The notes under the pieces are model-generated. The model ran no database searches. It was not told where the DNA came from and was given only the letters and a program-made list of their open reading frames with translations. Below, one piece after another: positions 33,587 through 59,953 of a stretch of DNA of 64,000 bases (its first letter is position 1; every line of letters begins with the position of its first letter). The position numbers were made by a program, and so were the translations under genes. Source of the stretch: Macrostomum hystrix (Eukaryota; Animalia; Platyhelminthes); NCBI GenBank assembly GCA_950097015.1, contig CATNEN010000030.1, forward strand, positions 3,596,001-3,660,000. The letters are read 5' to 3'.

Positions 33587-34550
33587 GCTATATCTCATCG
33601 CACACTGCTATATCTCATCGCACACTGCTATATCTCATCGCACACTGCTATATCTCATCGCACACTACTATATCTCATCGCACACTGCTATATCTCATCG
33701 CACACTGCTATATCTCATCGCACACTGCTATATCTCATCGCACACTGCTATATATCTCATCGCACACTGCTATATCTCATCGCACACTGCTATATCTCAT
33801 CGCACACTGCTATATCTCATCGCACACTGCTATATCTCATCGCACACTGCTATATCTCATCGCACACTACTATATATCTCATCGCACACTGCTATATCTC
33901 ATCGCACACTGCTATATCTCATCGCACACTGCTATATCTCATCGCACACTGCTATATCTCATCGCACACTGCTATATCTCATCGCACACTACTATATATC
34001 TCATCGCACACTGCTATATCTCATCGCACACTGCTATGTCTCATCGCACACTGCTATATCTCATCGCACACTGCTATATCTCATCGCACACTGCTATATA
34101 TCTCATCGCACACTGCTATATCTCATCGCACACTGCTATATCTCATCGCACACTACTATATCTCATCGCACACTGCTATATCTCATCGCACGCTGCTATA
34201 TATCTCATCGCACACTGCTATATCTCATCGCACACTGCTATATTTCATCGCACACAGCTATATATCTCATCGCACACTGCTATATATCTCATCGCACACT
34301 GCTATATCTCATCGCACACTGCTATATCTCATCGCACACTGCTATATCTCATCGCACACTGCTATATCTCATCGCACACTGCTATATCTCATCGCACACT
34401 GCTGTATCTCATCGCACACTGCTATATCTCATCGCACACTGCTATATCTCATCGCACACTACTATATCTCATCGCACACTGCTATATCTCATCGCACGCT
34501 GCTATATATCTCATCGCACACTGCTCTATCTCATCGCACACTGCTATATA
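33587..34550. repeat. 20-bp tandem repeat (ATATCTCATCGCACACTGCT) with 22-bp (+TA) variants, about 47 copies
   Basis: Directly visible. It explains the spurious 33575/33579/34036 ORFs. Confidence 0.98.
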
Positions 34551-36741: not shown

Positions 36742-39700
36742 ATGAACGGCAGCAGCCACAAGCGCGAAGTCTCGCGCAAGCCGGCAGTGTCGTTTGCGCG
36801 CCCGCTGCGAGAATTCAGCGAGTACACCACTGCTCACGGGCTGGGACGCCTGGGTGCTCAGCAGACCTTCATAGGCCATGCAATCTGGCTGCTGTTTATC
36901 GTGGCCACCTACTGCGGCATGGCCTATCACATGTACACCCTGCTTGATCGCTTCCTGGCTGTGCCGCTGCTCACCGGGCTGAGCACATCGCTGCCTTTCG
37001 AATTCCCCGACGTCTACGTCTGCCCGAGCGGCGGCGCCCTCTCCATGAGCAAGATCTCCGAGGCCTACAGCCTCGCCGAGGTGCAGCAGCTGCGCGGCCT
37101 CCGTAAGGCCTGCAATCTGAGCTGCCAGCGGGCGCTCAGCAAGCTGGACATTGCTGCCAGCGACCGAAGCGGGGCCAAAGCTGTGCGCCTTAGCCGAGTG
37201 ATGCTGGCATTGTCGGATACGTTGGCTGCCACTGAGAAATCGGTTATAGACACCTACAGGCTGGACTATATGCGACTGAGTGAGTGCTCGCCCTTCTGCG
37301 AATTTTGAATTTCATTCGCTAGTGAAGTTTTTAATACACACCAAAACACGAATTAGCAATGCGCCTCAGTGCAGCCTTGTAAGCCCGTCACAGGAGCACG
37401 CCTTCATCAACTTCGACTTTGATGGTCACCGACCTTTAGCCCTCAATTACGCCAGCTAATGCCTGTACCCATCTTGCTGTTTAAATAATACCAGTGGAGT
37501 GGGGATTCGAACCACCGAACTTTAGTCGTGAGTCCGATGCTCTGACTACTAGGGGGGTTCACAAACTCGAAATTTCACAACGTCGAAAACTCGAAAAGCA
37601 GCTAATTTCATAAGCTCGAAACTTTACAATACACAAACGAGTACCTTATTAAACAGTAATAACTTCTAATCAATAATAATAATAATAATAATTAATTGCA
37701 CCTGCCCCAATTGGGTCAGATGTGCAGCCGACAGCACAGCCGCAGCTAATGCGCGGCGCATCTGAAGGCTGCGTACAGCTGTTCAGTCCACGGACTGGGG
37801 GGACGCCACACCCACCTTCAATTATCCCAGCTGATGCTGGTACCCATTTAACAGCTAGGTGAACTGAAGCAATGCAGAGTTAAGTGTCTTGCTAAAGGAC
37901 GCAAATTGTTCGAGTGGATTCGGGAATCGAACCCCCGACCTTCAAGTCGTGAGTCCGACGCCCTAACCACTAGGCTACAACCTCTGCTCATTCTAATCAA
38001 TACATTATCAAAATGAAGTACTACTCAGAGCTTTTGTCACATGCTGGAAATAGAAACAAAAATATAACACTTGAATATTAATAGCTTTTGGGTTAGTCTT
38101 CAATTTTAACTGCCGCGCTCTGGACTGTCATAAGATTAGACCAGTAGTGAATATACCTTGGATTTCTTGTGCTTAAAAAATTGCGCTGTTGTGAAATTTC
38201 GAGCTTATAAAGTTTTGACGTTGGGATATTTCGAATTTGTGAAATTTCGAGCTTGTGAAGTTTCGACCTTGTGAAAAAATGCTTTTCGGTGTTGTGAACT
38301 TTCGAGCTTGTGATAGCACCCCACTAGGCTACATCCCCTTGATAGTTCTACTGCTAATCAAAGTATCAGGTTCTATAACCTGGTTCAGTTAAAGAGTCTA
38401 CAGTCAAATTCATTAGAATAGCATTGTGAAGTTAGGTGTTCTATTCATATATCTGCAGTTCTTGACTTCCTCATGAGCAGTGAACAACAAAACACTTTTC
38501 TATTGCAATGCTGCGCTTAAATCCGCAGTGAACCTCACCAACTGTCGATTCACGGAGGCCGGCGAAGAGTACAAAGGCAGTGCGAACACGGTGCCCGTGT
38601 ATTCCAGTAGCCTCACCTACATTGCTAACAAGCCACTCGTCACTTATCAGCAGTGCATGAGCTGGAACAGGGCAGCCGAGCACCTGGACAGATCAAATCT
38701 GCTGGCTGCAAAGGCTGCAGCAGCTGACATCCGGAGGCTTGGATTCCCTGACAGCGAGGACCGGTGCCGACAGCCGCGTGGCCTGCCGCTGTCAAAGCTT
38801 TTCCACTTTGCCACGCGTAAGACTTGAGAGAAGTCTTGCGTAAGTCTTGAATTTGCTTAGCTGTAACTCAAACTAGGAAGTTTTGAAGTTGAACCTTCAA
38901 AGGTACCGTTCATTTGAAGTTGAAGCACAGCTTTGGGGAGAATAACTAATGCTATCTGGTGCATTCCAATTAATGGGCGAACCTAAGAGTTACAGCAAGT
39001 GTTAATTTGTACAGCACAGATTTTATCTATCCATGTGCCTGTACGTATGCCCGTGTGCTTGTAAGTATCGGTGTACTTGTAAGTATCCGTGTACCTGTAC
39101 GTATCCGTGTGCCTTTACGTATCCGTGTACCTGTACGTATCTGTGAACCTGTACGTATCTGTGAAGCTGTACGTTTCCGTGTGCCTGTAAGTATCCGTGT
39201 ACCTGTCCGTATCCGTGTACCTGTACGTATCCGTGTGCCTGTAAGCATCCGTGTGCTTATAAGTATCCATGTACCTGTACGTATCTGAGTGCCTGTAAGC
39301 ACTGTAAGCAAGAATTCATTTGAATGAATATAGTTGTCTCCTTTTCAGATAAAGCAATCTATAACGGATCAATCTAATTCAAGGCAAGCTAGCAATGTAG
39401 CTCGTATATGGCCAAGTAAATATTCTAAACCACCACAGGTCCCCTACAGGAGGTCATGACGTGCGTCAGCAAAAGCGGGCCGGGACCCAAGTTTAACTAT
39501 TCATGTTTCACCACGGAACCGTCGCGCATCACTGTGGAAATGTGCGCCGAGTGCTGCTACGTGAAGAACTTCACCTACATTGGCCTGCAGTATGACCATT
39601 GCTACTGCGACAATGACTATCTGACCATGCCAGTGTCCGACAACTGTGACATTGCCTGCTCTGGGGATGAGAGCCAGCTATGCGGAGGCGACGCTGAGCT

Positions 39701-42700
39701 CAGCGTGGTGCAAGTGCGCTCGTCAGGTGAGCTAGGACTGTGCTTTACGAGATTTTTACCTGAGTTTAACTCTTTAATAGCTATTGGTTGATCCCTAAAT
39801 TCCGAAATTGATTCATTTTGTTTCTTTCCTTTTACCAACTCACTCTTCAGAACTTGTCGTCATAGTTTTGACTTCCTGAATACAAATCTTAGTGTGATTT
39901 TTACGTCATAAGTCCCACAAATCCACAGGTGATAGTCCTTTAATGATTCCTTTCGGCAGCAACATGAGCAGATCATTAGGCGGACCCTACTGCTTTTACA
40001 TGGATGAAGAGGATGGTCTATCAGCTTCCTACTGTGACATTCCGTTTTGCCGTGAGTGACCTGAACATATATTGAGTCTCTATCATTATTAAGTTGCAAA
40101 TTATACCATTTACGCGTTCATAGAAGTTTGTTAGACAAATATTTTAAATGTTCGATGATTTTTATCCATCCAATGCACAGTCACGTCTCTATCTGGCCAC
40201 TTCGTCAACGTGCTCCATACAAAGTGCTACTCGTATTTCGGCAAATATACCGAAATAGGACATAATATTAGGCATGTTTTGCATCAATGTTGACCAAGAA
40301 AGTGTACTCTATAGATACTAACTGTTTCTTATCGGACAGAATTTTGTAGATGTGAAACTACAAGCGCTTCTAAATTCAAAATTAGTCAACATGCCCAATG
40401 ACTTAATCCATAAATTTGTTTTAAGCATCACATGGTCCTATACCTGACTTAGCTGCTTGTTTAGCTGTAGGGTGGGTGGACGCAGTGGGGGAGGCGAGGG
40501 ATTCCGTTAATCGCTACTGGCCCGCAAACAGGTAGAAATTTACGGGACGTGCACCTGTTGGGGTTATCCGGAAGCGTTGTCTTATTAGGTTCCTCTGAAC
40601 CAGGTCCATAGGAACTGGTTGAGCCCGAGTTGGCGTAGCCGGTCTCTGTTAAAGAAAGGCCAGTGGTCGACAAAGTGCTCAGTATCTTCGTTGTCATACT
40701 CGCAAAGGGGGCACAATGCACTCTCTAGGTCAACCAGTGCCCAGTGACATTCGATGACCACGGTGGGATCGGGATCAGGGGTGCAGAGCCCAGGAGGGAG
40801 CCAGAGCCGCCATCTAGGGGAGGTTGCCTGCCAGCTCGTTCTGTGGGATCCTGGGATCTGTTCAGGGATCACCTGAAAAAAACTTTCCAAGTGCAACATT
40901 TTGATGTGCTTTTGCAGCTGCACCACCGTCATACGACTGCGCCGTGAGCGCAGTAGAGGAGTCGGTTGATCGCAAGCAACTATCGGCCTACAGTGGCTAC
41001 ATGAATGTCACAACGAAGGGTCGCGAGTGCATGGTTTGGAGTACTGTGAAAAGAAGAATTGAAGATGGCAGCTTGCGCTTGCTGAATGTGCTCGACTTGC
41101 TCGAGGAGCCCGTTGGAAGTGAGTAGCAGCGTTTCTCGGATTTTTTTGCTATACAAAAGTGCATTTTGGTGGTCCTTGAATGTGTGACCAAACCCGAAAT
41201 GACAAAAATGTGTATTTAGTTACAAGCCATAGACAATTCTGAATAACAACTTTGTCGCAGCTTTGATGACATCCTAACCTGTCGCACACAGCTTACACAA
41301 GTGCCAAGGTGATTGCGCTGCACATTCAAACACCGGACTACGCGCTAAGCAACTCCACTAATTATTGTCGGGCCGTGCGAGTTCTGTTCGACGCTGAAAT
41401 TTTATCCGACGGGACTTCAGTGGTCATGTGAGCGTTGCGTCTTTGCTTTGAAACTAAAATTAACAGCAAATAACTTTTAGCTTGATTTTCCTTTCTTTAA
41501 TCTTGCAGACGAGACACAGCCGTCAATTCTGCTGCACCAGGCTGCTTCTATCTGAATGAAGTTGAAGATCAAGTGTTCTTTGAAATCTGCAATGTGAAGC
41601 CGTGTTGTTAGTAGTTTGCTGTAAACCTTACTATATATATTCCCATCTGTAAAATGCACATAATTAAAACTTTGTCGCTTGTATGTTTTATGGCTATAGG
41701 CAGCTTTAACTGTAGCCCTGTACTATAAGCTAGTGGTAAGAGCTTTAGACTTCTGATGATAAGGTCGGGGGTTCGAATTTGAGTCCAAGGGAAGCAATTC
41801 AGTAATGCTTCAGTTCATCCAGTGGTAAAACTAGTACTGTACACGCCTTTAGAAGCGCCATGCAGCCACTGGCTGTGATTTTTTTTATCTCTCTACCTGT
41901 CTATGCCAGATGAAGCGAGCCCTGGAGTCTCCGGCACCATCCGGGACCGGGTCGGCAGGGCGCTTCTCACTCGACAATTCAGCGGCGGCATGACCATCGG
42001 CTTCACCGACTGTCGCTTCTTCACCAAGCGATGCACTCGTGCAGACTTTGAGAATGTGCAGCACCCGGAGCTGGGCGTTTGCCACAGGTTTGTCAAGGAA
42101 AACTTCGTCGACAAGCTCACCAGATCCCAAGTGGCCGAGGCGCAGCTCGAGCTGAAGTATTTTACGGACTCGTCGGATTCGCTTGGAAGAAGATTTGAGA
42201 ACATCAGCAAGATGTCCGGCGTGGTGCACAATGGACTCCATGCACAGAATGCAGATACAGCTCTCACTGTAAGATCAGCTAGACTTCTGTGGGTCATTTT
42301 TAGATGCGATTGAACTCATCCGTGCTTCCTTTCGCTCCTTCCGATCGATAAAACCAACAATAAATAAAGATTTCTGGGCCAAGGACCATTAGTAGAAGAG
42401 GGAATTCATTGAAGTCCAAATCGACCGCATGTTGAGCAGATAGCTCATGGGTTTGTTCTGAATTACTCCTTTTCGAGTCCACGTGGGATAGCCTCAGAGT
42501 TAGTTTTGAGCACAGAACACGCACTTGCCAACATTAACAGTAGAAAGACACTATTTCCCCCCTAGGGATAGACCACGGGGGATATTTCAAATGCCCACTG
42601 CCTACTTCACGATTTCTCCCAAACCTAATGACCTATTTTCGTAAATGTCCACTGCCTACTTCACGATTTCTCCCAAAACTAATGACCTATTTTCGTAAAT

Positions 42701-45192
42701 GTCCACTGCCTACTTCACGATTTCTCCCAAACCTAATGACCTATTTTCGTAAATGTCCACTGCCTACTTCACGATTTCTCCCAAAACTAATGACCTATTT
42801 TCGTAAATGTCCACTGCCTACTTCACGATTTCTCCCAAACCTAATGACCTATTTTCGTAAATGCCCACTGCCTACTTCACGATTTCTCCCAAACCTAATG
42901 ACCTATTTTCGTAAATGTCCACCAAGACCTTGTTTGTAGGTCACTGTTGTGTATTTTGAGATCATTGTTTATAGTTTTTTATGCAAGTCAACGGCTTCTG
43001 ACTTTGCCTTCAACCATAGACTATTGACTCTTCTTGAGTGATTAATTTCTTGCTGTGTGTGCTAGATGTGCATTGTATAGAAGACAATAGATTTGAATAG
43101 ATGTGTATTGTATTGTATTGTATAGCATTTGTATAGTATTAATTACGAATGGATTAACAACACTTTAGCGTATACAATACACTTCATATATCCCCAATTT
43201 ATATAAATGCTTGAGTGCCTTGTTTATTGCCGGAAGCGAATAGTACAGGTACATCTACTGGTCCACTTGATGTTTGGTTGTATTGATGTGTCGTTGTTTT
43301 AATTTATTTGTCACATTATATCTGATCTGAAAATGTAGCTCATACACTCTAATGTTGCCAATGCAGGTGATCATTGTTCCGGACGGCGTCTATCCTTGGA
43401 CGGCGAACTCAATCTCGGTGAGCCCAGCTCAGAGCAAGGGCGTGCTACTCCGGCATGACAAGACAGTGCGCTTCTCCAAACCGCCAAAGCTTTGCCTAAA
43501 GTCACTACCGCCCGTCACCTATGCGATCACCTCATGGTTTCCGAATGTTTCCAAGGAGGCCGACCTGTAAGAATGCCTTGCAAACTACTACAAGATAATC
43601 GCTAAATCTGATTCAATTCGGCACAATCAAAGTTGCATCTGATTTTCTCAAAATTTCTCACAGACCTGCCAGCTACACTGAGGCGGTTTTCAATGAGTCG
43701 AACTGGAGCGACAAAATTGATAAACTCAAATTGCTGCTACAAGCACTGAGCGCCGCTAAGTAAGACTTCTAGTGATTTCCAAGCTTCTTTAGATTAAGAT
43801 AGACAAGAAATATTTCTTGAAAAGGACACCGAAAATGGACATTAGGTTTGATATAACGCCGCGTTTCGCACTTCAATGTGCATAAAAAATTAATCGCAGG
43901 AGGCTGCTGGCAATGCCACATCATTTGGTGAGATTATACGCGCAGCTAGCGAGGAGGCAATTCTGCCCATTCCGCTGACTCCTGAGCACACTCGCATACA
44001 GATACTGTACGCAGGCACACGCTCACACAGGTGTAAACATCTGCCCTGACTTTCTCATTGTCAGGTAGCTACTATTGACTGTGCCTTGGAGGTTCGCATT
44101 GAAGGTCGTAACTCATGAAACATTTCCTACTTCAACAGAGGCCCAGTTCGGCAATTCAAGGAGTACAGATCAGTCAGCAAGGAGCACTGTATCAACCAAT
44201 ACGTTTTGAAACAATTTATCAGCAATTGCAACTGCCTGCCTTCGTTTCTGCCCATTCCGATTCACCTGGCCCAAGCCAGCCCCCTGTGCTTTAACCAGAC
44301 TGACGCCGAGAGTCTGTACCTAGCTGAGCAGTGCTATAAGAAGCAGCTCGATAACATCGAGCTCTACCGCATGTCGGCTCGCTCGGATTGCCAGCCGCCC
44401 TGCGAGACACCCAGCTATTCCATTCGGGAGGTGGCGCACCCCTGGCCCAGTGTGAAACGAGAGCGAGCCCTCAGCTTCCTGGCCGAGCTGGCCGGCCTGC
44501 ACGGATACCCGAATGATGTCAAGCCCACCAGAGGCCCAGTAAGTTTGTACTACGCCTACCTGCGAGCTCTGGAACTGTCTCGCGTACCGCTGAACGCAAG
44601 AAATCTGTCAGATCTGGTTGACTTCGCCTATGAGATTGATATTGTGCAGGACAGGCTGGCCATGATCACAGTGCAAGCGTCGCAGCAGTTTGGCGATGAA
44701 ATTGTGGAAGAGGAGGCGTACCCAGTAAAAAATCTCTTGGCCGACATGGGCGGTGAGTTCTTGAGTGCACTTGTTGAATTTTTGTGCAGTTAGTGACTAG
44801 AACTTCCGACCCCTGGGAGGTCTGGAGTTCGAAGCTCAGCCCAAGGAAAACTGTTTGTGTTCTGGTGTGTGTGGCTAGCAGCAGCTGTTGCAAGATACCT
44901 GCTCAAGATAGGATAACACGAGCAGGAAATCTCTGTCGCACTGTCAGGCGCCCTAGGCTTGTGGTGCGGTGTCTCCGTGCTTACCATCTGCGAAGTGCTT
45001 GAGCTGTGCAGCATACTTAGCCTAGCGCTGAGTCGTCAACATCCGGGCCTACTCAGACGGCAGTCCAGAGTCAGTCGGGACACTTCAGCCTACACAGTGC
45101 CAGAGCCAGCTCCGCTGCCCTTATCCGAACTTGACGTTCGTACAACCGAGGAGTGGAAGGAGCAAGCCGCTAGCCGACAAGCAGCGATATGA
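36742..45192 (+). CDS. DEG/ENaC-family (amiloride-sensitive) cation channel subunit with a kringle-like / WSC / kringle insertion, about 1036 aa
   Basis: Exons 36742-37279, 38481-38816, 39439-39726, 40918-41118, 41292-41427, 41509-41606, 41910-42268, 43367-43566, 43664-43759, 44139-44752 and 44948-45192 all have GT/AG ends and are phase-compatible; the total is 3111 nt. Family motifs: EFSEYTTAHGLGR (HG motif), TM1 IWLLFIVATYCGMAY, FPDVYVC, CRF...C...DF...HPELGVCHRF, thumb cysteines (C...CNC...C...CQPPC), WPS, and pre-M2/TM2 LLADMGG|ALGLWCGVSVLTICEVLEL. Confidence 0.9.
37553..38322. mobile_element. MITE with GGGG termini, subterminal TTTCGAGCTTGTGAA-like repeats and a 5-bp direct repeat ACTAG
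   Basis: The left end GGGGGTTCACAAACTCGAAA is an inverted match to the right end TTTCGAGCTTGTGATAGCACCCC. ACTAG lies at 37548-37552 and 38323-38327. Confidence 0.75.
37676..37990 (-). mobile_element. Full-length tRNA-derived SINE with a (TTA)n tail and a 12-bp TSD
   Basis: The minus-strand head GTAGCCTAGTGGTTAGGGCG...GGTTCGATTCCC carries Pol III A and B boxes. The tail is (AAT)n on the + strand at 37672-37692. The TSD TTCTAATCAATA lies at 37664-37675 and 37991-38002. Confidence 0.88.
38481..38816 (+). CDS. Exon 2 of the DEG/ENaC gene: kringle-like module 1 (N-terminal half only)
   Basis: NCRFTEAGEEYKGSANT...QQCMSW...DRCRQPRG matches the kringle pattern C..G.G..Y.G....C..W...N.CR.P. The three distal cysteines are not seen. 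Confidence 0.75.
39028..39300. repeat. 18-bp diverged tandem repeat (GTACGTATCCGTGTACCT), about 15 copies, intronic
   Basis: Directly visible. It explains the 39007 and 39027 ORFs. Confidence 0.92.
39439..39726 (+). CDS. Exon 3 of the DEG/ENaC gene: WSC domain
   Basis: TC...ITVEMCAECC...FTYIGLQYDHCYCDND...CDIACSGDESQLCGG...LSV matches the WSC pattern (T+..C...C...Y.GLQY..C.C...C...C.G.....CGG...LS+). Confidence 0.85.
40470..40765 (-). mobile_element. 3' fragment of a non-LTR retrotransposon ORF2 (C-terminal CCHC-like zinc motif)
   Basis: The minus strand reads VTGH, then (after a frameshift) LVDLESALCPLCEYDNEDTEHFVDHWPFFNRDRLRQLG, the TGH...CP.C...E...H...(C)P....R motif typical of LINE ORF2 C-termini. 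Confidence 0.65.
40918..41606 (+). CDS. Exons 4-6 of the DEG/ENaC gene: kringle module 2
   Basis: YDC...YSGYMNVTTKGRECMVW...|...TNYCRAV...|...APGCFYLNEVEDQVFFEICNVKPC: all six kringle cysteines are recovered across three exons. Confidence 0.82.
41725..41880 (+). mobile_element. Degenerate, internally deleted SINE copy
   Basis: AGCTAGTGGTAAGAGC...GGTCGGGGGTTCGAAT head, followed by ATGCTTCAGTTCATCCAG and TGTACACGCCTT, which match the family body. Confidence 0.65.
42589..42923. repeat. 54-bp tandem repeat, about 6 copies, intronic
   Basis: AAATG(T/C)CCACTGCCTACTTCACGATTTCTCCCAAA(C/A)CTAATGACCTATTTTCGT repeated. It explains the 42628 ORF. Confidence 0.95.
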
Positions 45193-45642: not shown

Positions 45643-47503
45643 GATCTTATGGATCTTATGGATCTTATGGATCTTATGGATCTTATGAATCTTATGGATC
45701 TTATGAATCTTATGGATCTTATGGATCTTATGGATCTTATGGATCTTATGGATCTTATGGATCTTATGAATCTTATGGATCTTATGGATCTTATGAATCT
45801 TATGGATCTTATGAATCTTATGGATCTTATGGATCTTATGGATCTTATGGATCTTATGGATCTTATGAATCTTATGGATCTTATGAATCTTATGGATCTT
45901 ATGGATCTTATGGATCTTATGAATCTTATGAATCTTATGAATCTTATGAATCTTATGAATCTTATGGATCTTATGGATCTTATGGATCTTATGGATCTTA
46001 TGGATCTTATGGATCTTATGAATCTTATGAATCTTATGGATCTTATGGATCTTATGGATCTTATGAATCTTATGGATCTTATGAATCTTATGGATCTTAT
46101 GGATCTTATGGATCTTATGGATCTTATGGATCTTATGGATCTTATGGATCATATGGATCTTATGAATCTTATGGATCTTATGAATCTTATGAATCTTATG
46201 GATCTTATGGATCTTATGGATCTTATGGATCTTATGGATCTTATGGATCTTATGAATCTTATGAATCTTATGGATCTTATGGATCTTATGGATCTTATGA
46301 ATCTTATGGATCTTATGGATCTTATGGATCTTATGAATCTTATGGATCTTATGAATCTTATGGATCTTATGGATCTTATGGATCTTATGGATCTTATGGA
46401 TCTTATGGATCTTATGGATCTTATGGATCTTATGAATCTTATGGATCTTATGAATCTTATGGATCTTATGGATCTTATGGATCTTATGGATCTTATGGAT
46501 CTTATGGATCTTATGGATCTTATGGATCTTATGGATCTTATGGATCTTATGGATCTTATGGATCTTATGAATCTTATGAATCTTATGGATCTTATGAATC
46601 TTATGGATCTTATGGATCTTATGGTGGATCTTATGGATCTTATGAATCTTATGAATCTTATGAATCTTATGGATCTTATGAATCTTATGAATCTTATGGA
46701 TCTTATGAATCTTATGGATCTTATGGATCTTATGGATCTTATGGATCTTATGGATCTTATGGATCTTATGAATCTTATGAATCTTATGGATCTTATGGAT
46801 CTTATGAATCTTATGGATCTTATGGATCTTATGGATCTTATGGAACTTATGGATCTTATGGATCTTATGGATCTTATGGATCTTATGGATTTTATGGATC
46901 TTATGAATCTTATGAATCTTATGGATCTTATGAATCTTATGGATCTTATGGATCTTATGGTGGATCTTATGGATCTTATGAATCTTATGAATCTTATGAA
47001 TCTTATGCATCTTATGAATCTTATGAATCTTATGGATCTTATGAATCTTATGGATCTTATGGATCTTATGGATCTTATGGATCTTATGGATCTTATGGAT
47101 CTTATGAATCTTATGAATCTTATGGATCTTATGAATCTTATGGATCTTATGGATCTTATGGATCTTATGGTGGATCTTATGGATCTTATGGATCTTATGA
47201 ATCTTATGAATCTTATGAATCTTATGGATCTTATGAATCTTTTGAATCTTATGGATCTTATGAATCTTATGAATCTTATGGATCTTATGAATTTTATGGA
47301 TCTTATGAATCTTATGAATCTTATGGATCTTATGGATCTTATGGATCTTATGGATCTTATGGATCTTATGGTGGATCTTATGGATCTTATGGATCTTATG
47401 AATCTTATGGATCTTATGGTGGATCTTATGGATCTTATGGATCTTATGGATCTTATGAATCTTATGGATCTTATGGATCTTATGAATCTTATGGATCTTA
47501 TGG
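45643..47503. repeat. 9-bp tandem repeat (ATGGATCTT / ATGAATCTT), about 205 copies
   Basis: Directly visible, with occasional 12-bp ATGGTGGATCTT variants. Confidence 0.99.
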
Positions 47504-47819
47504 AGCTTTTCTTAGGCTCTTAACATTAAAGCTGCTGTGATAAAAAGTAGAAAGGGTAGAAAATAGTAATTGGGTAGTGAATATCTTTAAAAAAAGTAAT
47601 TCATTTTAGTAATATTGTCACAATAGAAAATAAATGCGTTCGCGTAGAGAGCCTACAAATTTTTCATTTAAAGCCTGTAAATGTGCATTGTACCTTATGC
47701 CTCTCAGAACTGACTTGTTCTTACTCTTAGAACTTACACTCTGGGAGATTAGCCCACGTTCAAATGAAGTCCTCTACATGGAAGAGGATACAGGTGTGGC
47801 TAGAGCTACCACACGGGCC

Positions 47820-52833: not shown

Positions 52834-55800
52834 TCACTTGAGCCTAGCCTCGTTGTCCCGCGCAATCTCCCTAGTGAGGCGCTCCTTATATGAGAAGATG
52901 TCGCCCTCCCACTTCGTGACCTTGCAGTTGTCGCACACCCAGATCTCCTCAGCAACCTGTTGGATTAGCCTGAAGTCGTGACTAACAAGCAGCAGGCCGC
53001 CTTCGAACTCGTTGATGGCGTCGGCCAGGGCGTCGATAGTTTCGATGTCCAGATGATTGGTCGGCTCGTCCAGCAGTAGCATATGCGGCGTCTTATTAGC
53101 TAACCACGCAAAGATAATACGGCAGCGCTGACCATCGGACAAGGTGCGAATCGGACACACCTGCTGGGCCCCGGTGAGGCCGTAGCGACCCAGAATCTTG
53201 CGCATCTCGTCCCTCTCTGTCACCTCCGGGAATTGCTGCATCATCCAGTCAAGAGAGGTGAACGAAATGTCCAGCATCTCGTGCAGGTGCTGATGATACC
53301 GACCGATGCGGACGTGCGAGTGCCGCCGAATCAGACCGTCGGTTGGCTGCAGCTCGCCAGCGATAAGCTTCAGCAGTGTACTCTTGCCTGTTGGTGTTTT
53401 GGGAATTTCAAGGAGTCAATTTTGTGAATCACGGTTTACTGTTTCAATGACTAACTATGACCTCTTCATGATGTCAAAAAATTCCTGACTTTCATAATGT
53501 CAAACAGTGTCTATGACCGTTTCAGGATGTCAAACAATTGTCTATGACTGTTTCAGGATGTCAAACAGTGTCTATGACTGTTTCAGGATGTCAAACAATT
53601 GTCTATGACTGTTTCAGGATGTCAAACAACGTCTATGACTGTTTCAGGATGTCAAACAATTGTCTATGACTGTTTCAGGATGTCAAAAAATTGTCTATGA
53701 CTGTTTCAGGATGTCAAACAATTGTCTATGACTGTTTCAGGATGTCAAACAATTGTCTATGACTGTTTCAGGATGTCAAACAGTGTCTATGATTGTTTCA
53801 GGATTTCAAACAATCGTCTATGACTGTTTCAGGATGTCAAACAACGTCTATGACTGTTTCATGATGTTAAACAACGTCTATGACTGTTTCAGGATGTCAA
53901 ACAACGTCTATGACTGTTTCATGATGTTAAACAACGTCTATGACTGTTTCATGATGTTAAACAACGTCTATGACTGTTTCAGGATGTCAAACAGTGTCTA
54001 TGACTGTTTCAGGATGTCAAACAATTGTCTATGACTGTTTCAGGATGTCAAACAGTGTCTATGATTGTTTCAGAATGTCAAACAATTGTCTATGACTGTT
54101 TCAGGATGTCAAACAATTGTCTATGACTGTTTCAGGGGTGTCAAACAATTGTCTATGACTGTTTCAGGATGTCAAACAATTGGATCAATGATTGTTTCAG
54201 GATGTCAAACAATTGTCTATGACTGTTTCAGGATGTCAAACCATTGTCTATGACTGTTTCAGAATGTCAAACAATTGTCTATGACTGTTTCAGGATGTCA
54301 AACCATTGTCTATGACTGTTTCAGAATGTCAAACAATTGTCTATGACTGTTTCAGGATGTCAAACAATTGTCTATCACTGTTTCAGGGGTGTCAAACAAT
54401 TGTCTATGACTGTTTCAGGATGTCAAACAATTGGATCAATGATTGTTTCAGGATGTCAAACAATTGTCTATGACTGTTTCAGGATGTCAAACAATTGTCT
54501 ATGACTGTTTCAGGATGTCAAACAATTGTCTATCACTGTTTCAGGGGTGTCAAACAATTGTCTATGACTGTTTCAGGATGTCAAACAATTGGATCAATGA
54601 TTGTTTCAGGATGTCAAACAATTGTCTATGACTGTTTCAGGATGTCAACAATTGTCTATGACTGTTTCAGGATGTCAAACCATTGTCTATGACTGTTTCA
54701 GAATGTCAAACAATTGTCTATGACTGTTTCAGGATGTCAAACAATTGTCTATCACTGTTTCAGGGGTGTCAAACAATTGTCTATGACTGTTTCAGGATGT
54801 CAAACAATTGGATCAATGATTGTTTCAGGATGTCAAACAATTGTCTATGACTGTTTCAGGATGTCAAACAATTGTCTATGACTGTTTCAGGATGTCAAAC
54901 AATTGTCTATCACTGTTTCAGGGGTGTCAAACAATTGTCTATGACTGTTTCAGGATGTCAAACAATTGGATCAATGATTGTTTCAGGATGTCAAACAATT
55001 GTCTATGACTGTTTCAGGATGTCAACAATTGTCTATGACTGTTTCAGGATGTCAAACAATTGTCTATGACTGCTTCAGGATGTCAAACAATTGTCTATGA
55101 CTGTTTCAGAATGTCAAACAATTGTCTATGACTGTTTCAGAATGTCAAACAATTGTCTATGACTGTTTCAGAATGTCAAACAATTGTCTATGACTGTTTC
55201 AGGATGTCAAACAATTGTCTATGACTGTTTCAGGATGTCAAACAATTGTCTATGACTGTTTCAGGATGTCAAACAATTGTCTATGACTGTTTCAGGATGT
55301 CAAACAATTGTCTATGACTGTTTCAGGATGTCAAACAATTGTCTATGACTGTTTCAGGATGTCAAACAATTGTCTATGACTGTTTCAGGATGTCAAACAA
55401 TTGTCTATGACTGTTTCAGGATGTCAAACAATTGTCTATGACTGTTTCAGGATGTCAAACAATTGTCTATGACTGTTTCAGGATGTCAAACAATTGGATC
55501 AATGATTGTTTCAGGATGTCAAACAATTGTCTATGACTGTTTCAGGATGTCAAACAATTGGATCAATGATTGTTTCAGGATGTCAAACAATTGTCTATGA
55601 CTGTTTTCAGGATGTCAAACAATTGTCTATGACTGTTTCAGGATGTCAAACAATTGTCTATCACTGTTTCAGGGGTGTCAAACAATTGTCTATGACTGTT
55701 TCAGGATGTCAAACAATTGGATCAATGATTGTTTCAGGATGTCAACAATTGTCTATGACTGTTTCAGGATGTCAACAATTGTCTATGACTGTTTCAGGAT

Positions 55801-58800
55801 GTCAAACATTGTCTATGACTGTTTCAGGATGTCAACAAATTGTCTATGACTGTTTCAGTATGTCAAACAATTGTCTATGACTGTTTCAGGATGTCAAACA
55901 ATTGTCTATGACTGTTTCAGGATGTCAACAATTGTCTATGACTGTTTTCAGGATGTCAAACAATTGTCTATGACTGTTTCAGGATGTCAAACAATTGTCT
56001 ATGACTGTTTCAGGATGTCAAACAATTGTCTATGACTGTTTCAGGAGGTCAAACAATTGTCTATGACTGTTTCAGGATGTCAAACAATTGTCTATGACTG
56101 TTTCAGGATGTCAAACAATTGTCTATGACTGTTTCAGGATGTCAAACAATTGTCTATGACTGTTTCAGGATGTCAAACAATTGTCTATGACTGTTTCAGG
56201 ATGTCAAACAATTGTCTATGACTGTTTCAGGATGTCAAACAATTGTCTATGACTGTTTCAGGATGTCAAACAATTGTCTATGACTGTTTCAGGATGTCAA
56301 ACAATTGTCTATGACTGTTTCAGGATGTCAAACAATTGTCTATGACTGTTTCAGGATGTCAAACAATTGTCTATGACTGTTTCAGGATGTCAAACAATTG
56401 TCTATGACTGTTTCAGGATGTCAAACAATTGTCTATGACTGTTTCAGGATGTCAAACAATTGTCTATGACTGTTTCAGATGTCAAACAATTGTCTATGAC
56501 TGTTTCAGGATGTCAAACAATTGTCTATGACTGTTTCAGGATGTCAAACAATTGTCTATGACTGTTTCAGGATGTCAAACAATTGTCTATGACTGTTTCA
56601 GGATGTCAAACAATTGTCTATGACTGTTTCAGGAATGTCAAACAATTGTCTATGACTGTTTCAGGATGTCAAACAATTGTCTATGACTGTTTCAGGATGT
56701 CAAACAATTGTCTATGACTGTTTCAGGATGTCAAACAATTGTCTATGACTGTTTCAGGATGTCAAACAATTGTCTATGACTGTTTCAGGATGTCAAACAA
56801 TTGTCTATGACTGTTTCAGGATGTCAAACAATTGTCTATGACTGTTTCAGGATGTCAAACAATTGTCTATGACTGTTTCAGGATGTCAAACAATTGTCTA
56901 TGACTGTTTCAGGATGTCAAACAATTGTCTATGACTGTTTCAGGATGTCAAACAATTGTCTATGACTGTTTCAGGATGTCAAACAATTGTCTATGACTGT
57001 TTCAGGATGTCAAACAATTGTCTATGACTGTTTCAGGATGTCAAACAATTGTCTATGACTGTTTCAGGATGTCAAACAATTGTCTATGACTGTTTCAGAT
57101 GTCAAACAATTGTCTATGACTGTTTTCAGATGTCAAACAATTGTCTATGACTGTTTCAGAATGTCAAACAATTGTCTATGACTGTTTCAGAATGTCAAAC
57201 AATTGTCTATGACTGTTTCAGGATGTCAAACAATTGTCTATGACTGTTTCAGGATGTCAAACAATTGTCTATGACTGTTTCAGGATGTCAAACAATTGTC
57301 TATGACTGTTTCAGGATGTCAAACAATTGTCTATGACTGTTTCAGGATGTCAAACAATTGTCTATGACTGTTTCAGAATGTCAAACAATTGTCTATGACT
57401 GTTTCAGAATGTCAAACAATTGTCTATGACTGTTTCAGAATGTCAAACAATTGTCTATGACTGTTTCAGGATGTCAAACAATTGTCTATGACTGTTTCAG
57501 AATGTCAAACAATTGTCTATGACTGTTTCAGAATGTCAAACAATGTGTGACTGCTTCATATTGACTAATAATCTAGACTACCAAAGTCATAGCGCCATTC
57601 TCCATGTAGCCCAGTGATAAGAGCTTAGGACTTCTGACCAAGAGGTCCAGAGTTCGAAAGCCCTGAAAAACAATTTATGTCCTTCAATAGGTCCCCATTG
57701 CGGCAGGTCACCTAACTAAAAAAAAGGGAAACAGCAATAGCTAGAGTGTAGAAATTTGAGTAGGTGTGACGGCCTGCCCAGTCCACGGACTGAATAGCCG
57801 TACGCAGCGTTGGAAACGCCACAATTTATACAATGCATTCTCAATCATACAGCAAAACATTCACTGCATGCAGAAACTAACCAGCTCCGTTGGGACCGAC
57901 TAGAGCAGCCCGGGTGTCCAAATCCACGCCGAAGTCCAAGTCCTTGTAGATTAGCGGCTTGCCAGGGGCGTACTGAAAGCTCACGTGCTGAATCATGATG
58001 ACCGGAGGCGGAATCGTACCGCAGTCGGGAAAATAGAAGGTGACAGTCTTGTCGTGCACCACCCTCTCAGTGAGGCCCTTGTCTACCATCTTGGCTAGGG
58101 TTTTCTCCTTGCTCTGGGCTTGGCGCGCCAGCTTAGCTGATCCGTGGCCAAACCTGGCTATGTAATTCTTCATATTGGAGATCTGGCCCTGCTCCCATTT
58201 GAATCGCTTCATCTGGTTCTCCTCCAGTTCCAGTCGGGTCTGCACGTACTGGTCATAGTTGCCGCCGTAGTAGATCAGGCGCTTCTTGCGCATGTGAATG
58301 ATGTTAGTGCAGACACCGTTGAGAAAGTCCTGCGAATGGCTGATGATAACCAGGATGCGTTTGTACTGCTTCAGCTCCTCTTCAAGCCAGACGCACGCGT
58401 TTAAATCCAGGTGGTTAGTGGGCTCGTCCAGCATCAGTAGGTGCGGCTTAAGGAATAGCGCCCTAGCCAGGGAGATGCGCATGCGCCAGCCTCCACTGAA
58501 GTGCTTCACCTGGATGGAGATTGTTGCACACGGAAATGGCTAGATACAACTTGGTCCTAGTCTCATTGGTCGAATTTATGATTGGTTGAGTTTTTGAACT
58601 AGATTCAATGGACATGTTTGATTGGTTTGAGTTTCTGAACTAGATTCAATGGACATGTCTGATTGGTTGAGTTTCTGAACTAGATTCAATGGACATGTCT
58701 GAATCTGATTGGTTGAGTTTCTGAACTAGATTCAATGGACACGTCTGATTGGTTGAGTTTCTGGACTTGATTCAATGGGCATATCTGATTGGTTTGAGTT

Positions 58801-59953
58801 TCTGGACTAGATTCAATGGACATGTCTGATTGGTTTGACTTTCTGGACTAGATTCAATGGGCATATCTGATTGGTTTGAGTTTCTGGACTGGATTCAATG
58901 GGCATGTCTGATTGGTTTGAGTTTCTGGACTAGATTCAATGGACATGTCTGATTGGTTTGACTTTCTGGACTAGATTCAATGGACATGTCTGATTGGTTG
59001 AGTTTCTGGACTGGATTCAATGGGCATATCTGATTGGTTTGAGTTTCTGGACTGGATTCAATGGGCATATCTGATTGGTTTGAGTTTCTGGACTGGATTC
59101 AATGGGCATGTCTGATTGGTTAAGTTTCCAACTACGGGCACACTGCTAACAGCAAAAGCCTGACCTGCTTGTCCTGCATCTCGGGCGTGAAGCCCAGACC
59201 GTGGAGAATCTCGGCAGCCCTGGTGGCCGCCTTGTCAGCGTCCAGCTCTTCCAGGCGCTCGTAGGCCTCCATGAGCCGTTCGTGCGATTCTTGATCATCG
59301 CGCAGTGCCAAAGCATTAGCCTCCTCTTCCAGACGGACTCGCTCCTCGTCCACCTCCATGACGCACTCGATGGCGGTCTTATCAGACGGCGCCATCTCGC
59401 GCTGCAATAGAAAAATATCCAAATGAGACTGCACTGGCAGTTCCCTATTAGCCAATGCGGCCAGCAGTGTACTCTTGCCGCAGCCGTTCAAGCCAATCAG
59501 ACCGTAGCGCCGGCCGCAGTTGAGCTCGAGTCTGGTGTCCTGCAGCAACTCCTGGCCGTGGAAGGTGATGCTGAGATTTGAAACGTGAATGTCGCGAGAG
59601 TCCGGATGGCTGGCCAAGACGCCGGTGCAGGCGCGATGGGCCACCACGCGATCCGATAAAAGATTCAGCGTCTCAATCTCGTTGGCTAACGCGGTGGGCA
59701 TGTCATCGTCGGAGCCCATAAAATCTTCGTCTTTGCTCCTGCTGCCGCCGCCACCATTAGCCGAGGCTGAGGCGGCTGCGGATTCGCCAGCTTCCGCTCC
59801 GTTTAGTCCAGTCTCTGGCGTCTCATCCCCAGCGGCACTGCCAGCTTCATCTTCGTCATCGCGCAGTTGTTGCTGCAAGGGCTTCTTGGTGTCTTTGCGC
59901 TTGGCTGCTTCTTTTTTAGCCTGGGCTCGCTTCTTCTTGTGATCGGAAGGCAT
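52834..59953 (-). CDS. ABCF2: ABC-F family translation-associated ATPase ABCF2, about 656 aa
   Basis: Exons 59953-59165, 58509-57882 and 53387-52834 (phases 0 and 1; 1971 nt). The N-terminus is MPSD..KK.A..KKEAAK. Both ABC cassettes are present: GLNGCGKST / FSGGWRMR / [11 protein letters not shown] and GPNGA|GKST / LSDGQR / [11 protein letters not shown]. There are no transmembrane segments. Confidence 0.96.
53440..57552. repeat. 31-bp minisatellite (AAACAATTGTCTATGACTGTTTCAGGATGTC), about 133 copies, filling ABCF2 intron 2
   Basis: Directly visible, with 30-bp variants near the left end and scattered 1-bp indels. Confidence 0.98.
57599..57812 (+). mobile_element. Diverged SINE copy in ABCF2 intron 2
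   Basis: GTAGCCCAGTGATAAGAGC...GAGTTCGAAAGCCC head, with a 3' part CCCAGTCCACGGACTGAATAGCCGTACGCAGC matching the family. Confidence 0.65.
58575..59127. repeat. 40-41-bp tandem repeat, about 14 copies, filling ABCF2 intron 1
   Basis: TCTGATTGGTT(T)GAGTTTCTG(A/G)ACTAGATTCAATGGACATG repeated. Confidence 0.96.

What the first reader, a model, noticed from the sequence alone, without database searches (positions are those of the whole stretch)
36742..45192. DEG/ENaC channel with a kringle-like / WSC / kringle cassette grafted into its ligand-sensing finger region
Seen: the spliced model places about 350 aa (roughly residues 180-533) between the post-TM1 FPDVYVC/finger helices and the C.F....C...DF...HP palm segment. 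That insert reads as a kringle-like half, a full WSC domain and a complete kringle. Established: the finger is the most variable, ligand- or protease-sensing part of DEG/ENaC channels (peptides in FaNaC, inhibitory tracts in ENaC); kringles bind proteins; WSC domains bind carbohydrates; and kringle followed by WSC is the architecture of Kremen receptors. Inference: this may be a receptor-channel gated or anchored by glycans or extracellular proteins. I do not recall this combination being described, but novelty needs a database check.
Basis: partly seen in the sequence, partly recalled or inferred. Interest (0 to 1): 0.92.

Follow-up and report, generated by a model that had tools for sequence, protein, structure and literature searches.

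The report
Flatworm sodium channel carrying kringle-WSC modules
This is a real, transcribed flatworm gene for a DEG/ENaC-type sodium channel subunit whose outer "finger" carries a 378-residue insert made of a kringle split by a WSC domain plus a second kringle. The design is shared with Macrostomum lignano genes, I found no paper describing it, and it looks like a built-in docking arm for extracellular partners.

Summary
A 12-exon, 1061-aa open reading frame (36742-45192, + strand) encodes a DEG/ENaC subunit. It has the HG motif, FPDVYVC, a G-V-S pore motif and Pfam ASC matches on two exons.

Six exons (38529-41606, aa 181-558) put 378 cysteine-rich residues into the finger. RNA contigs from four runs join exon 1 to the cassette, link its exons, and join its last exon to the palm exon. 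The cassette acceptor is 38529, not 38481.

The "kringle-like half" is completed by a separate exon after the WSC exon, so the layout is kringle 1 [WSC nested between Cys3 and Cys4] followed by kringle 2. Pfam calls WSC above threshold. It calls Kringle only below threshold; a profile search of solved structures and a predicted-fold comparison of the M. lignano homologue support kringle 2 and the C-terminal part of kringle 1.

All 13 detectable relatives of the channel core are M. lignano proteins. Two long ones are colinear with six of the seven cassette-side exons, and all 22 cassette cysteines are conserved. UniProt lists them only as uncharacterised "WSC domain-containing protein".

Function is inferred. 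Most likely the cassette docks to a matrix or glycan partner and is coupled to gating.

Two unchecked first-stage notes report the same architecture on other pieces of this genome.

The parts
36742..37279 (+). Exon 1 (aa 1-180): N-terminus with the HG motif, TM1, FPDVYVC (beta1) and the first finger helices. Ends in phase 1.
   Evidence: Pfam ASC E 2.7e-11. Donor 37279 seen in RNA contigs of runs X6 and X7. Aligns to FaNaC 61-167, ASIC5 33-113 and ENaC alpha 53-135.
38529..38816 (+). Exon 2 (aa 180-276), phase 1-1: kringle 1 N-terminal part (Cys1, Cys2, Cys3; CRFTEAGEEYKG, C.SWN, RCRQPRG).
   Evidence: Acceptor 38529 from RNA joints. 33-42% identical to M. lignano P0007 and P0002 with all Cys kept. 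Not recognised by Pfam or by fold search. A second donor at 38839 would be out of frame.
39439..39726 (+). Exon 3 (aa 276-372), phase 1-1: complete WSC domain (10 Cys) nested in kringle 1.
   Evidence: Pfam WSC 44.8 bits, E 1.5e-11. The family profile hits yeast Wsc1 (1e-09) and the Kremen1 WSC (2e-07). The homologue model aligns to Wsc1 at Z 8.8 and to Kremen at Z 8.7. An RNA contig starts exactly at 39439, and the joint 39726>39929 is seen.
39929..40051 (+). Exon 4 (aa 372-413), phase 1-1: kringle 1 C-terminal part (GGPYCFY...YCDIPFC; Cys4-6).
   Evidence: RNA joints 39726>39929 and 40051>40918. 49-50% identical to the M. lignano proteins. The profile segment hits the C-terminus of tPA kringle 2 at E 2e-04. 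hhalign to kringle 2 gives E 2.3e-04.
40918..41118 (+). Exon 5 (aa 413-480), phase 1-1: kringle 2 N-terminal part (Cys1, Cys2; Y.GYMNVTTKGRECMVW).
   Evidence: RNA joints. Weak Pfam Kringle match, E 0.029. Profile matches to plasminogen, apolipoprotein(a) and prothrombin kringles.
41292..41427 (+). Exon 6 (aa 480-525), phase 1-2: kringle 2 middle (NYCR, Cys3) with a long loop.
   Evidence: RNA joints 41118>41292 and 41427>41509 in up to three runs. tblastn to P0002, P0005 and P0007.
41509..41606 (+). Exon 7 (aa 525-558), phase 2-1: kringle 2 C-terminal part (PGCFY...EICNVKPC; Cys4-6). End of the cassette.
   Evidence: RNA joints 41427>41509 and 41606>41910. In the homologue model, kringle 2 aligns 76-82 residues to many solved kringles, Z 6.5-7.0.
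41910..42268 (+). Exon 8 (aa 558-677): predicted last finger helix, then the C.F....C...DF...HP...G.C strands (palm and beta-ball).
   Evidence: One 1469-nt RNA contig (X7 record 20) runs through exon 6, exon 7, exon 8 and onward. Aligns to FaNaC 196-239, ASIC5 143-197 and ENaC alpha 279-312.
43367..43566 (+). Exon 9 (aa 678-744): palm strands.
   Evidence: tblastn to six M. lignano proteins. Splice sites chosen by consensus and reading frame. No RNA was laid here.
43664..43759 (+). Exon 10 (aa 744-776): 32-codon exon (NWSDKIDKLKLL).
   Evidence: Matches P0023 at 42% (E 0.014) and P0020 at 50%. Same size as the 96-nt exon of the M. lignano gene in L001. Keeps the reading frame.
44139..44752 (+). 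Exon 11 (aa 776-981): Cys-rich thumb, palm, and the pre-TM2 degenerin site region.
   Evidence: Pfam ASC E 1.7e-12. 13 M. lignano hits, best 4.1e-52. Aligns to FaNaC 340-584.
44948..45192 (+). Exon 12 (aa 981-1061): TM2 with LGLWCGVSVLTICE (G-x-S filter), C-terminus and stop codon.
   Evidence: Motif and hydropathy. tblastn to P0001, P0005, P0006, P0009 and P0011.

Best explanation
The gene encodes a pore-forming DEG/ENaC subunit (two membrane helices, HG motif, G-V-S filter). Its finger domain carries a conserved disulfide-rich arm: kringle 1 with a WSC domain nested in its Cys3-Cys4 loop, followed by kringle 2.

Shown here:
- The exons are spliced in frame into the channel mRNA.
- The arm is extracellular.
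- It sits in the alpha1-alpha3 finger segment.
- It is as conserved as the channel core between this species and M. lignano.

Inferred:
- A trimer would display three such arms at its outer upper corners. This is the region that binds FMRFamide in FaNaC and holds the protease-sensitive GRIP domain in ENaC.
- The arm docks the channel to an extracellular macromolecule (a matrix glycan or protein), and that binding or pulling is passed through the finger and thumb to the gate. This would make the subunit a self-tethered mechanosensitive or macromolecule-sensing channel.

I put the architecture at about 0.9 and this mechanism at about 0.4.
For: Architecture:
- Pfam ASC and WSC on single exons.
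- Seven GT..AG RNA joints chain exon 1 to exon 8.
- One 1061-aa ORF with canonical splice sites aligns end to end with P0007 (aa 22-1039, 36% identity, 668 bits).
- P0002 and P0007 are colinear with six of the seven cassette-side exons: both match exons 1-4 and exon 6; only P0002 matches exon 5, and neither gives a tblastn match to exon 7. Both continue into the palm exons.
- Intron positions are shared with the M. lignano gene.
- All 22 cassette Cys are conserved, and cassette identity (28-50%) is about equal to core identity (34-43%).
- The cassette profile hits WSC and kringle structures. In the predicted homologue cassette the WSC reaches Z 8.8 and kringle 2 reaches Z 6.5-7 over about 78 of 80 residues.

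Position:
- The flanks align to FaNaC up to residue 167 and from residue 196, and to ENaC alpha up to 135 and from 279.
- The GRIP domain lies between alpha1 and alpha2 (PMC6197857).
- The FMRFamide pocket is made by alpha1-alpha3, and the same corner is a proposed matrix-tether site of mechanosensitive DEG/ENaCs (PMC11026163).

Channel competence: HG, FPDVYVC and LGLWCGVSVLTICE are present, and there are only two hydrophobic segments.

Binding role, from established knowledge of the families rather than a test here: kringles and WSC domains are binding modules (Kremen, yeast Wsc1).
Against: - There are no functional data of any kind.
- Both kringles are highly divergent and below Pfam's threshold. 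They lack the canonical NPDGD...PWC lysine-binding stretch, which is interrupted by the WSC in K1 and replaced by a long loop in K2.
- The N-terminal part of kringle 1 was not recognised by any HMM or fold search, and the structure models are of low confidence (pLDDT 62.6 and 51.5).
- The productive exon 2-exon 3 junction is supported only by homology. The single low-depth contig there seems to use an out-of-frame donor.
- RNA depth is very low (about 2-6).
- No partner, tissue or phenotype is known.
Confidence: 0.4

Rival explanations
1. The cassette is a passive structural, folding, assembly or shielding module. It is a bulky glycosylated cap on the finger that does not bind a specific partner and does not take part in gating. 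The channel would be gated by something else (a peptide, pH or a small ligand) or be constitutively open.
For: The kringles have lost their canonical ligand-site motifs. There are seven N-glycosylation sequons in or next to the cassette. Finger regions are the most divergent part of the family even among close relatives (PMC11026163).
Against: All 22 Cys and many non-Cys positions are conserved across roughly 36%-identical proteins, which argues for a specific fold and surface. A 378-aa three-domain arm is a costly shield. The insertion point is the corner used for regulation in FaNaC, ENaC and ASIC.
Confidence: 0.27
2. The cassette is an ENaC-GRIP-like autoinhibitory insert that keeps the channel shut until proteases cut it out.
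For: It lies in the same finger segment as the ENaC GRIP domain (PMC6197857). From general knowledge, kringles are typical of protease-system proteins.
Against: There is no R-x-K/R-R furin-type site in this protein or in P0007, P0002 or P0020. The cassette is a set of compact disulfide-bonded domains, not short excisable tracts. It has no sequence similarity to GRIP.
Confidence: 0.06
3. In this particular gene the cassette-containing transcript is a minor or unproductive form. Either the gene mainly yields a truncated product because donor 38839 brings in the TGA at 38825, or it yields a cassette-less channel, since 37279>41910 would stay in frame.
For: The whole cassette is 1134 nt and is bounded by phase-1 introns. 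The only contig at the exon 2-exon 3 junction fits donor 38839. Expression is very low.
Against: The exon 1>exon 2 joint is seen in two runs and the exon 7>exon 8 joint in two runs. No skipping joint appears among those listed. The ORF is intact over all 12 exons. The junction residues RPLQ are conserved in M. lignano, with the R codon split by the intron.
Confidence: 0.1
4. The kringle and WSC exons belong to a separate gene nested in an intron of the channel gene.
For: None beyond their modular, phase-1 nature.
Against: RNA contigs bridge exon 1 to exon 2 and exon 7 to exon 8. M. lignano proteins contain channel and cassette in one chain. The cassette has no start codon or signal peptide of its own.
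Confidence: 0.02

Closest known systems
Macrostomum lignano predicted proteins PAA82974.1 (P0007), PAA59863.1, PAA46972.1, A0A1I8IV52 (P0002) and BOX15_Mlig034226g1 (P0023), listed as 'WSC domain-containing protein' or 'hypothetical protein'
   Same: Same architecture. The tblastn matches are colinear for most exons: both P0002 and P0007 match exons 1-4 and 6, only P0002 matches exon 5, and neither matches exon 7. The MAFFT alignment covers the whole cassette. The shared layout is TM1, finger helices, kringle 1 N-part, WSC, kringle 1 C-part, kringle 2, palm/thumb, TM2. Identity is 34-40%, all cassette Cys are kept, and intron positions are shared.
   Different: They are paralogues or distant orthologues in another species. 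None is characterised or named as a channel with kringles. Two models (P0011, P0018) lack the WSC and the kringle 1 C-part.
FMRFamide-gated sodium channels (FaNaC; PDB 7yvb, 8on7)
   Same: Closest solved structures to the channel core (E 4.7e-20 for the C-terminal half, 3.9e-06 for the N-terminal part). The finger alpha1-alpha3 corner is the ligand site (PMC11026163).
   Different: FaNaC has about 30 residues where this protein has about 60 + 378 + 24. No peptide-pocket residues could be aligned. Three other M. lignano DEG/ENaCs tested with peptides gave no currents (PMC9234716); it is not known whether they belong to this family.
ENaC GRIP domain (PDB 6bqn, 6wth)
   Same: An extra domain inserted in the finger between helices, at the periphery of the trimer, that controls gating (PMC6197857).
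   Different: GRIP is a small beta-sheet with furin-flanked inhibitory tracts that is unique to ENaC. Here there are three recognisable shuffled modules and no furin sites.
Kremen1/2 (kringle-WSC-CUB Wnt co-receptors; PDB 5fws)
   Same: The only well-known protein that combines kringle and WSC. The WSC of the family profile hits the Kremen1 WSC (E 2e-07; Z 8.7).
   Different: Kremen has the domains in series and adds CUB and a single membrane helix. Here the WSC is nested inside a kringle, a second kringle follows, there is no CUB, and the whole is inside a channel. It is not a Kremen family member.
Nematode EGAS channels (EGF plus ASC domain)
   Same: A precedent for a DEG/ENaC that has acquired shuffled extracellular modules (PMC10424705). 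It was the only multi-domain set near P0007 in the ESM Atlas.
   Different: The modules are EGF domains, not kringle or WSC. It is a different lineage, its function is also unknown, and the position of the EGF domains was not checked here.
MEC-4/MEC-10 touch channel with separate matrix proteins
   Same: From established knowledge: a DEG/ENaC thought to need extracellular tethering. The finger corner is a proposed tether site (PMC11026163).
   Different: There the matrix-binding modules are on separate proteins. Here binding-type modules are part of the channel chain. Mechanosensitivity was not tested.

Membership tests
DEG/ENaC (Pfam ASC, PF00858) | Match to the ASC profile above the curated cut-off | tested here: met
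   43.6 and 47.6 bits on two single exons against a cut-off of 23.6. The homologues score 92-131 bits.
DEG/ENaC (Pfam ASC, PF00858) | Two membrane helices flanking a large extracellular domain | tested here: met
   Only two hydrophobic peaks in the 1029-aa draft model, at about aa 42-62 and aa 948-977. The second peak corresponds to about aa 980-1009 in the final 1061-aa model.
DEG/ENaC (Pfam ASC, PF00858) | N-terminal HG motif, post-TM1 FPxVTxC motif, TM2 G-x-S filter with LGL..G.S.LT..E | tested here: met
   HG at aa 32, FPDVYVC at aa 88, LGLWCGVSVLTICE at aa 983.
DEG/ENaC (Pfam ASC, PF00858) | Trimeric, amiloride-sensitive cation channel | not testable with these tools
   Needs expression and electrophysiology.
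WSC domain (PF01822) | Profile match above the cut-off and the Cys-rich WSC fold | tested here: met
   44.8 bits against 27.8 on exon 3. 10 conserved Cys. The homologue model aligns to Wsc1 at Z 8.8 and to Kremen at Z 8.7.
Kringle domain (PF00051) | Profile match above Pfam's curated cut-off (34.3 bits) | tested here: not met
   15.1 bits on window exon 5. At most 30.5 bits for kringle 2 of P0018. No match for any kringle 1 piece. The spliced window protein itself could not be submitted because no reference exists for it.
Kringle domain (PF00051) | Six Cys in kringle spacing with the C..W, (N)(Y)CR and P.C(F/Y) motifs | tested here: met
   K1: C185, C222, C259 | C393, C407, C412. K2: C420, C450, C505, C537, C552, C557. 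All are conserved. Disulfide pairing is not testable.
Kringle domain (PF00051) | Kringle fold | tested here: inconclusive
   Kringle 2 of P0007 aligns 76-82 residues to about 40 solved kringles at Z 6.5-7.0, from a model of pLDDT 62.6. The profile hits prothrombin, HGF and tPA at 1e-05 to 2e-04. The N-part of kringle 1 was not recognised. The split-kringle reading rests on motifs, hhalign E 2.3e-04 and exon phases.
Kremen | Kringle, WSC and CUB in series followed by one membrane helix | tested here: not met
   No CUB match. The WSC is nested in the kringle. The host protein is a two-helix channel.
ENaC GRIP-type protease-gated finger insert | Polybasic (furin-type) sites flanking inhibitory tracts | tested here: not met
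   No R-x-K/R-R anywhere in the window model, P0007, P0002 or P0020.

The most novel reading that the evidence does not exclude
A DEG/ENaC channel that carries its own extracellular tether or receptor. The kringle[WSC]-kringle arm on each finger binds matrix glycans or a secreted protein, and binding or mechanical pull on the arm opens or closes the pore. That would be a natural one-chain fusion of a Kremen/Wsc1-type binding module with an ion channel. It would be testable in the transgenic model M. lignano and would directly probe how force or macromolecules act on the finger.
Probability: 0.3. Interest if true: 0.8.

Novelty: new variant of a known kind. Interest (0 to 1): 0.6.

Why it matters
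The finger corner of DEG/ENaC channels is where peptides (FaNaC), proteases and ions (ENaC) and protons (ASIC) act. It is also where matrix tethers of touch channels have been proposed to attach. How tethering or large ligands could gate these channels is still open.

A natural channel with recognisable binding modules (kringle, WSC) spliced into exactly that segment gives a defined handle. The arm can be deleted, swapped or pulled. Its partner can be fished out with a recombinant cassette. M. lignano relatives make RNAi and transgenic tests possible.

It is also a clean example of exon shuffling into an ion channel, with a WSC exon inserted into an intron inside a kringle. That is an unusual nested-domain layout.

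Limits: the family was found only in Macrostomum, expression here is low, and no function is known.

Tried and rejected
1. Pfam on the whole spliced protein was not possible. The spliced sequence has no reference and I did not type it. I used single exons, M. lignano homologues and local scripts instead.
2. The word-indexed protein search gave little. The cassette of P0007 found only itself. The family profile found only P0007 and P0023. Exon 11 found nothing. These give no information on relatives outside Macrostomum.
3. The ESM Atlas search returned only ASC clusters and one ASC+EGF nematode cluster for the full protein. For the cassette alone, all scores were below 0.8. These are leads only.
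4. The full-length AlphaFold2 model of P0007 was too poor (pLDDT 51.5, cassette under 50) to show how the cassette sits on the channel.
5. The cassette model (pLDDT 62.6) did not resolve the N-part of kringle 1, so the nested-kringle reading is not structurally verified.
6. My first gene model (1029 aa) missed a 32-codon exon. This was corrected.
8. The ENaC-like protease switch is rejected because there are no furin sites.
9. The nested separate gene is rejected by the bridging contigs.
10. The M. lignano channels tested in PMC9234716 (Mlig049925.g2, Mlig051885.g1, Mlig041003.g1) could not be mapped onto this family.
Full report
**What is in the sequence**

On the + strand between 36742 and 45192 there is a run of open segments. 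Translated one by one, they hit Pfam ASC (exon 1, E 2.7e-11; the large 3' exon, E 1.7e-12) and Pfam WSC (39429-39788, E 1.5e-11, 44.8 bits against a cut-off of 27.8). There is one weak Kringle match (40905-41123, E 0.029). These are not chance matches.

**RNA evidence**

Four small public runs from the same organism label hold spliced contigs. The listed GT..AG joints are:
- 37279>38529 (two runs)
- 39726>39929
- 40051>40918
- 41118>41292 (two runs)
- 41427>41509 (three runs)
- 41606>41910 (two runs)

Overlapping contigs chain exon 1-exon 2, exons 3-4-5, exons 5-6-7-8 and exons 6-7-8-onward (one contig of 1469 nt). The cassette exons are therefore part of the channel transcript and are not a nested gene.

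One junction is not directly shown. No joint into 39439 was listed. From the depth table, the 55 remaining letters of the one contig that starts at 39439 must lie within 38773-38969. That fits a second donor, 38839|gtaagt, rather than 38816|gtaaga. The 38839 form would read the TGA at 38825 and shift exon 3.

The in-frame junction 38816>39439 is supported by homology only. M. lignano proteins align across it without a gap, and RPLQ is conserved with the R codon split by the intron.

**Gene model**

With the RNA joints, splice consensus and homology, I obtain 12 exons, all GT..AG, and one ORF of 1061 aa.

A 32-codon exon at 43664-43759 was missing from my first model. It was found by similarity to P0023 and P0020, and it equals a 96-nt exon of the M. 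lignano gene.

The model aligns in one piece with M. lignano P0007 (aa 22-1039 against 12-1035, 36% identity, 668 bits) and with P0023 (40% identity).

Channel hallmarks are present: HG at aa 32, FPDVYVC at aa 88, LGLWCGVSVLTICE (G-V-S) at aa 983, a small residue (Ala) in LLADMGG before TM2, and only two hydrophobic segments.

**The cassette**

Residues 181-558 (378 aa, 22 Cys) come from six exons:
- Exons 2, 3, 4 and 5 are each phase 1-1.
- Exons 6 and 7 together are phase 1-1.

The whole cassette is 1134 nt between phase-1 introns.

What each exon carries:
- Exon 2: the first three kringle cysteines with their motifs (C.FTEAGEEYKG, C.SWN, RCRQPRG).
- Exon 3: a complete WSC domain.
- Exon 4: the last three kringle cysteines (GGPYCFY...YCDIPFC).
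- Exons 5-7: a second kringle with long loops (Y.GYMNVTTKGRECMVW, NYCR, PGCFY...EICNVKPC).

The Kremen-like order (kringle then WSC) is only apparent.

**Strength of the domain calls**

The WSC call is solid:
- Pfam is above its threshold.
- The family profile hits yeast Wsc1 (1e-09) and the Kremen1 WSC (2e-07).
- A predicted structure of the P0007 cassette aligns to Wsc1 at Z 8.8 and to Kremen at Z 8.7.

The Kringle call is below Pfam's cut-off in every test. It scores 15.1 bits in the window and at best 30.5 bits in P0018, and there is no match for any kringle 1 piece.

Support for the kringles comes from three sources:
- The family profile hits prothrombin (1.1e-05), HGF (8.8e-05) and tPA kringle 2 (2e-04) over the kringle 1 C-part and the kringle 2 N-part.
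- In the model, kringle 2 aligns 76-82 of about 80 residues to some forty solved kringles at Z 6.5-7.0.
- hhalign of kringle 1 with the WSC removed against kringle 2 gives E 2.3e-04 over the Cys3-Cys6 part.

The model's confidence is only moderate (pLDDT 62.6). The N-part of kringle 1 was not recognised, so the nested-kringle reading is well motivated but not proven.

**Position in the channel fold**

- A profile of the N-terminal part aligns to Aplysia FaNaC 61-167, ASIC5 33-113 and ENaC alpha 53-135.
- A profile of the part after the cassette starts aligning at FaNaC 196, ASIC5 143 and ENaC alpha 279, at the conserved C.F....C...DF strand.

The cassette, with about 70 helical residues before it and about 24 after it, therefore replaces the roughly 30 residues of FaNaC between 167 and 196. 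That is the finger alpha1-alpha3 segment.

This is the segment that forms the FMRFamide pocket (PMC11026163). In ENaC it carries the GRIP domain between alpha1 and alpha2 (PMC6197857).

The full-length model of P0007 was too poor to show the spatial arrangement (pLDDT 51.5).

**Relatives**

An exhaustive HMMER search of 1.84 billion cluster representatives with the large 3' exon found only 13 proteins, all from Macrostomum lignano.

The long ones carry ASC plus WSC (P0002, P0007, P0009, P0020, P0023) or ASC plus a weak Kringle (P0011, P0018).

By tblastn, P0002 and P0007 are colinear with six of the seven cassette-side exons. Both match exons 1-4 and 6, only P0002 matches exon 5, and neither gives a match to exon 7. 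The MAFFT alignment covers the whole cassette, exon 7 included.

All 22 cassette cysteines are conserved. The cassette is as conserved (28-50% identity) as the channel core (34-43%).

The M. lignano gene has introns at the same protein positions around exons 2, 3 and 8.

The window's own protein is not in the databases.

Earlier notes of this scan call the genome a Macrostomum flatworm and list two more first-stage sightings of the same architecture on other pieces. I could not read those pieces.

**Novelty**

The architecture exists in public predicted proteins, labelled only "WSC domain-containing protein", "Kringle domain-containing protein" or "hypothetical protein".

Full-text searches for DEG/ENaC terms together with kringle or WSC found nothing relevant. 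The single hit mentions kringles of plasmin-system proteases.

A precedent for modular DEG/ENaCs is the nematode EGAS group (EGF plus ASC; PMC10424705). It was also the only multi-domain set near P0007 in the ESM Atlas.

I therefore class this as a new variant of a known kind. It is real and conserved within Macrostomum, but undescribed and uncharacterised.

**Mechanism**

Shown: an intact channel subunit with an extracellular, conserved, three-module arm in the finger.

Inferred: the arm binds an extracellular macromolecule, and that binding or pull is coupled to gating (about 0.4).

The basis is the known binding roles of kringle and WSC modules (established knowledge, not tested here) and the known regulatory role of the finger corner (PMC11026163, PMC6197857).

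The rivals are:
- a passive cap (about 0.27);
- an unproductive or alternatively skipped cassette in this gene (about 0.1);
- an ENaC-like protease switch (about 0.06; there are no furin-type sites);
- a nested separate gene (about 0.02; contradicted by the bridging contigs).

Noticed in passing
window 38816-38841: Two good donors lie 23 nt apart (38816|gtaaga and 38839|gtaagt). The depth arithmetic on the single contig at this junction fits the downstream, out-of-frame donor, which would place the TGA at 38825 in frame. This may be an unproductive splice variant.
   Followed up: partly
window 37591-37985 (intron 1): A tRNA-Val(CAC) is predicted at 37912-37985 on the minus strand. RNA-contig depth here is 1700-6800 with many variant contigs and internal joints, so this looks like a highly repeated or expressed tRNA-related element.
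   Followed up: partly
window 42589-42922 (intron 8): A 54-nt minisatellite (6.2 copies, 97% matches) with RNA-contig depth of about 250-380. It is probably a dispersed transcribed repeat.
   Followed up: no
window 45643-47508: A very long 9-nt microsatellite-like array (about 206 copies) begins about 450 nt after the stop codon. It produces long artificial ORFs on both strands.
   Followed up: no
window 33587-34549 and 39028-39297: Further minisatellites: a 20-nt unit x47 upstream of the gene, and an 18-nt unit x15 in intron 2.
   Followed up: no
window 52834-59953 (minus strand) and 15816-16229: ABCF-type ATPase exons lie on the minus strand, and there is a UEV-like (ubiquitin E2 variant) ORF. 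These are ordinary neighbouring genes.
   Followed up: no
M. lignano proteins P0011 and P0018: These models keep the kringle 1 N-part and kringle 2 but lack the WSC and the kringle 1 C-part. They are either a natural cassette variant or gene models that skipped two phase 1-1 exons.
   Followed up: no
L001:3001-18409 (M. lignano NIVC01000440.1): The M. lignano gene for P0007 spans about 15 kb, with an intron of about 8 kb in the cassette region. tblastn at high identity did not recover residues 365-484 (the exon 4/5 equivalents). This may reflect an assembly difference or short exons.
   Followed up: no
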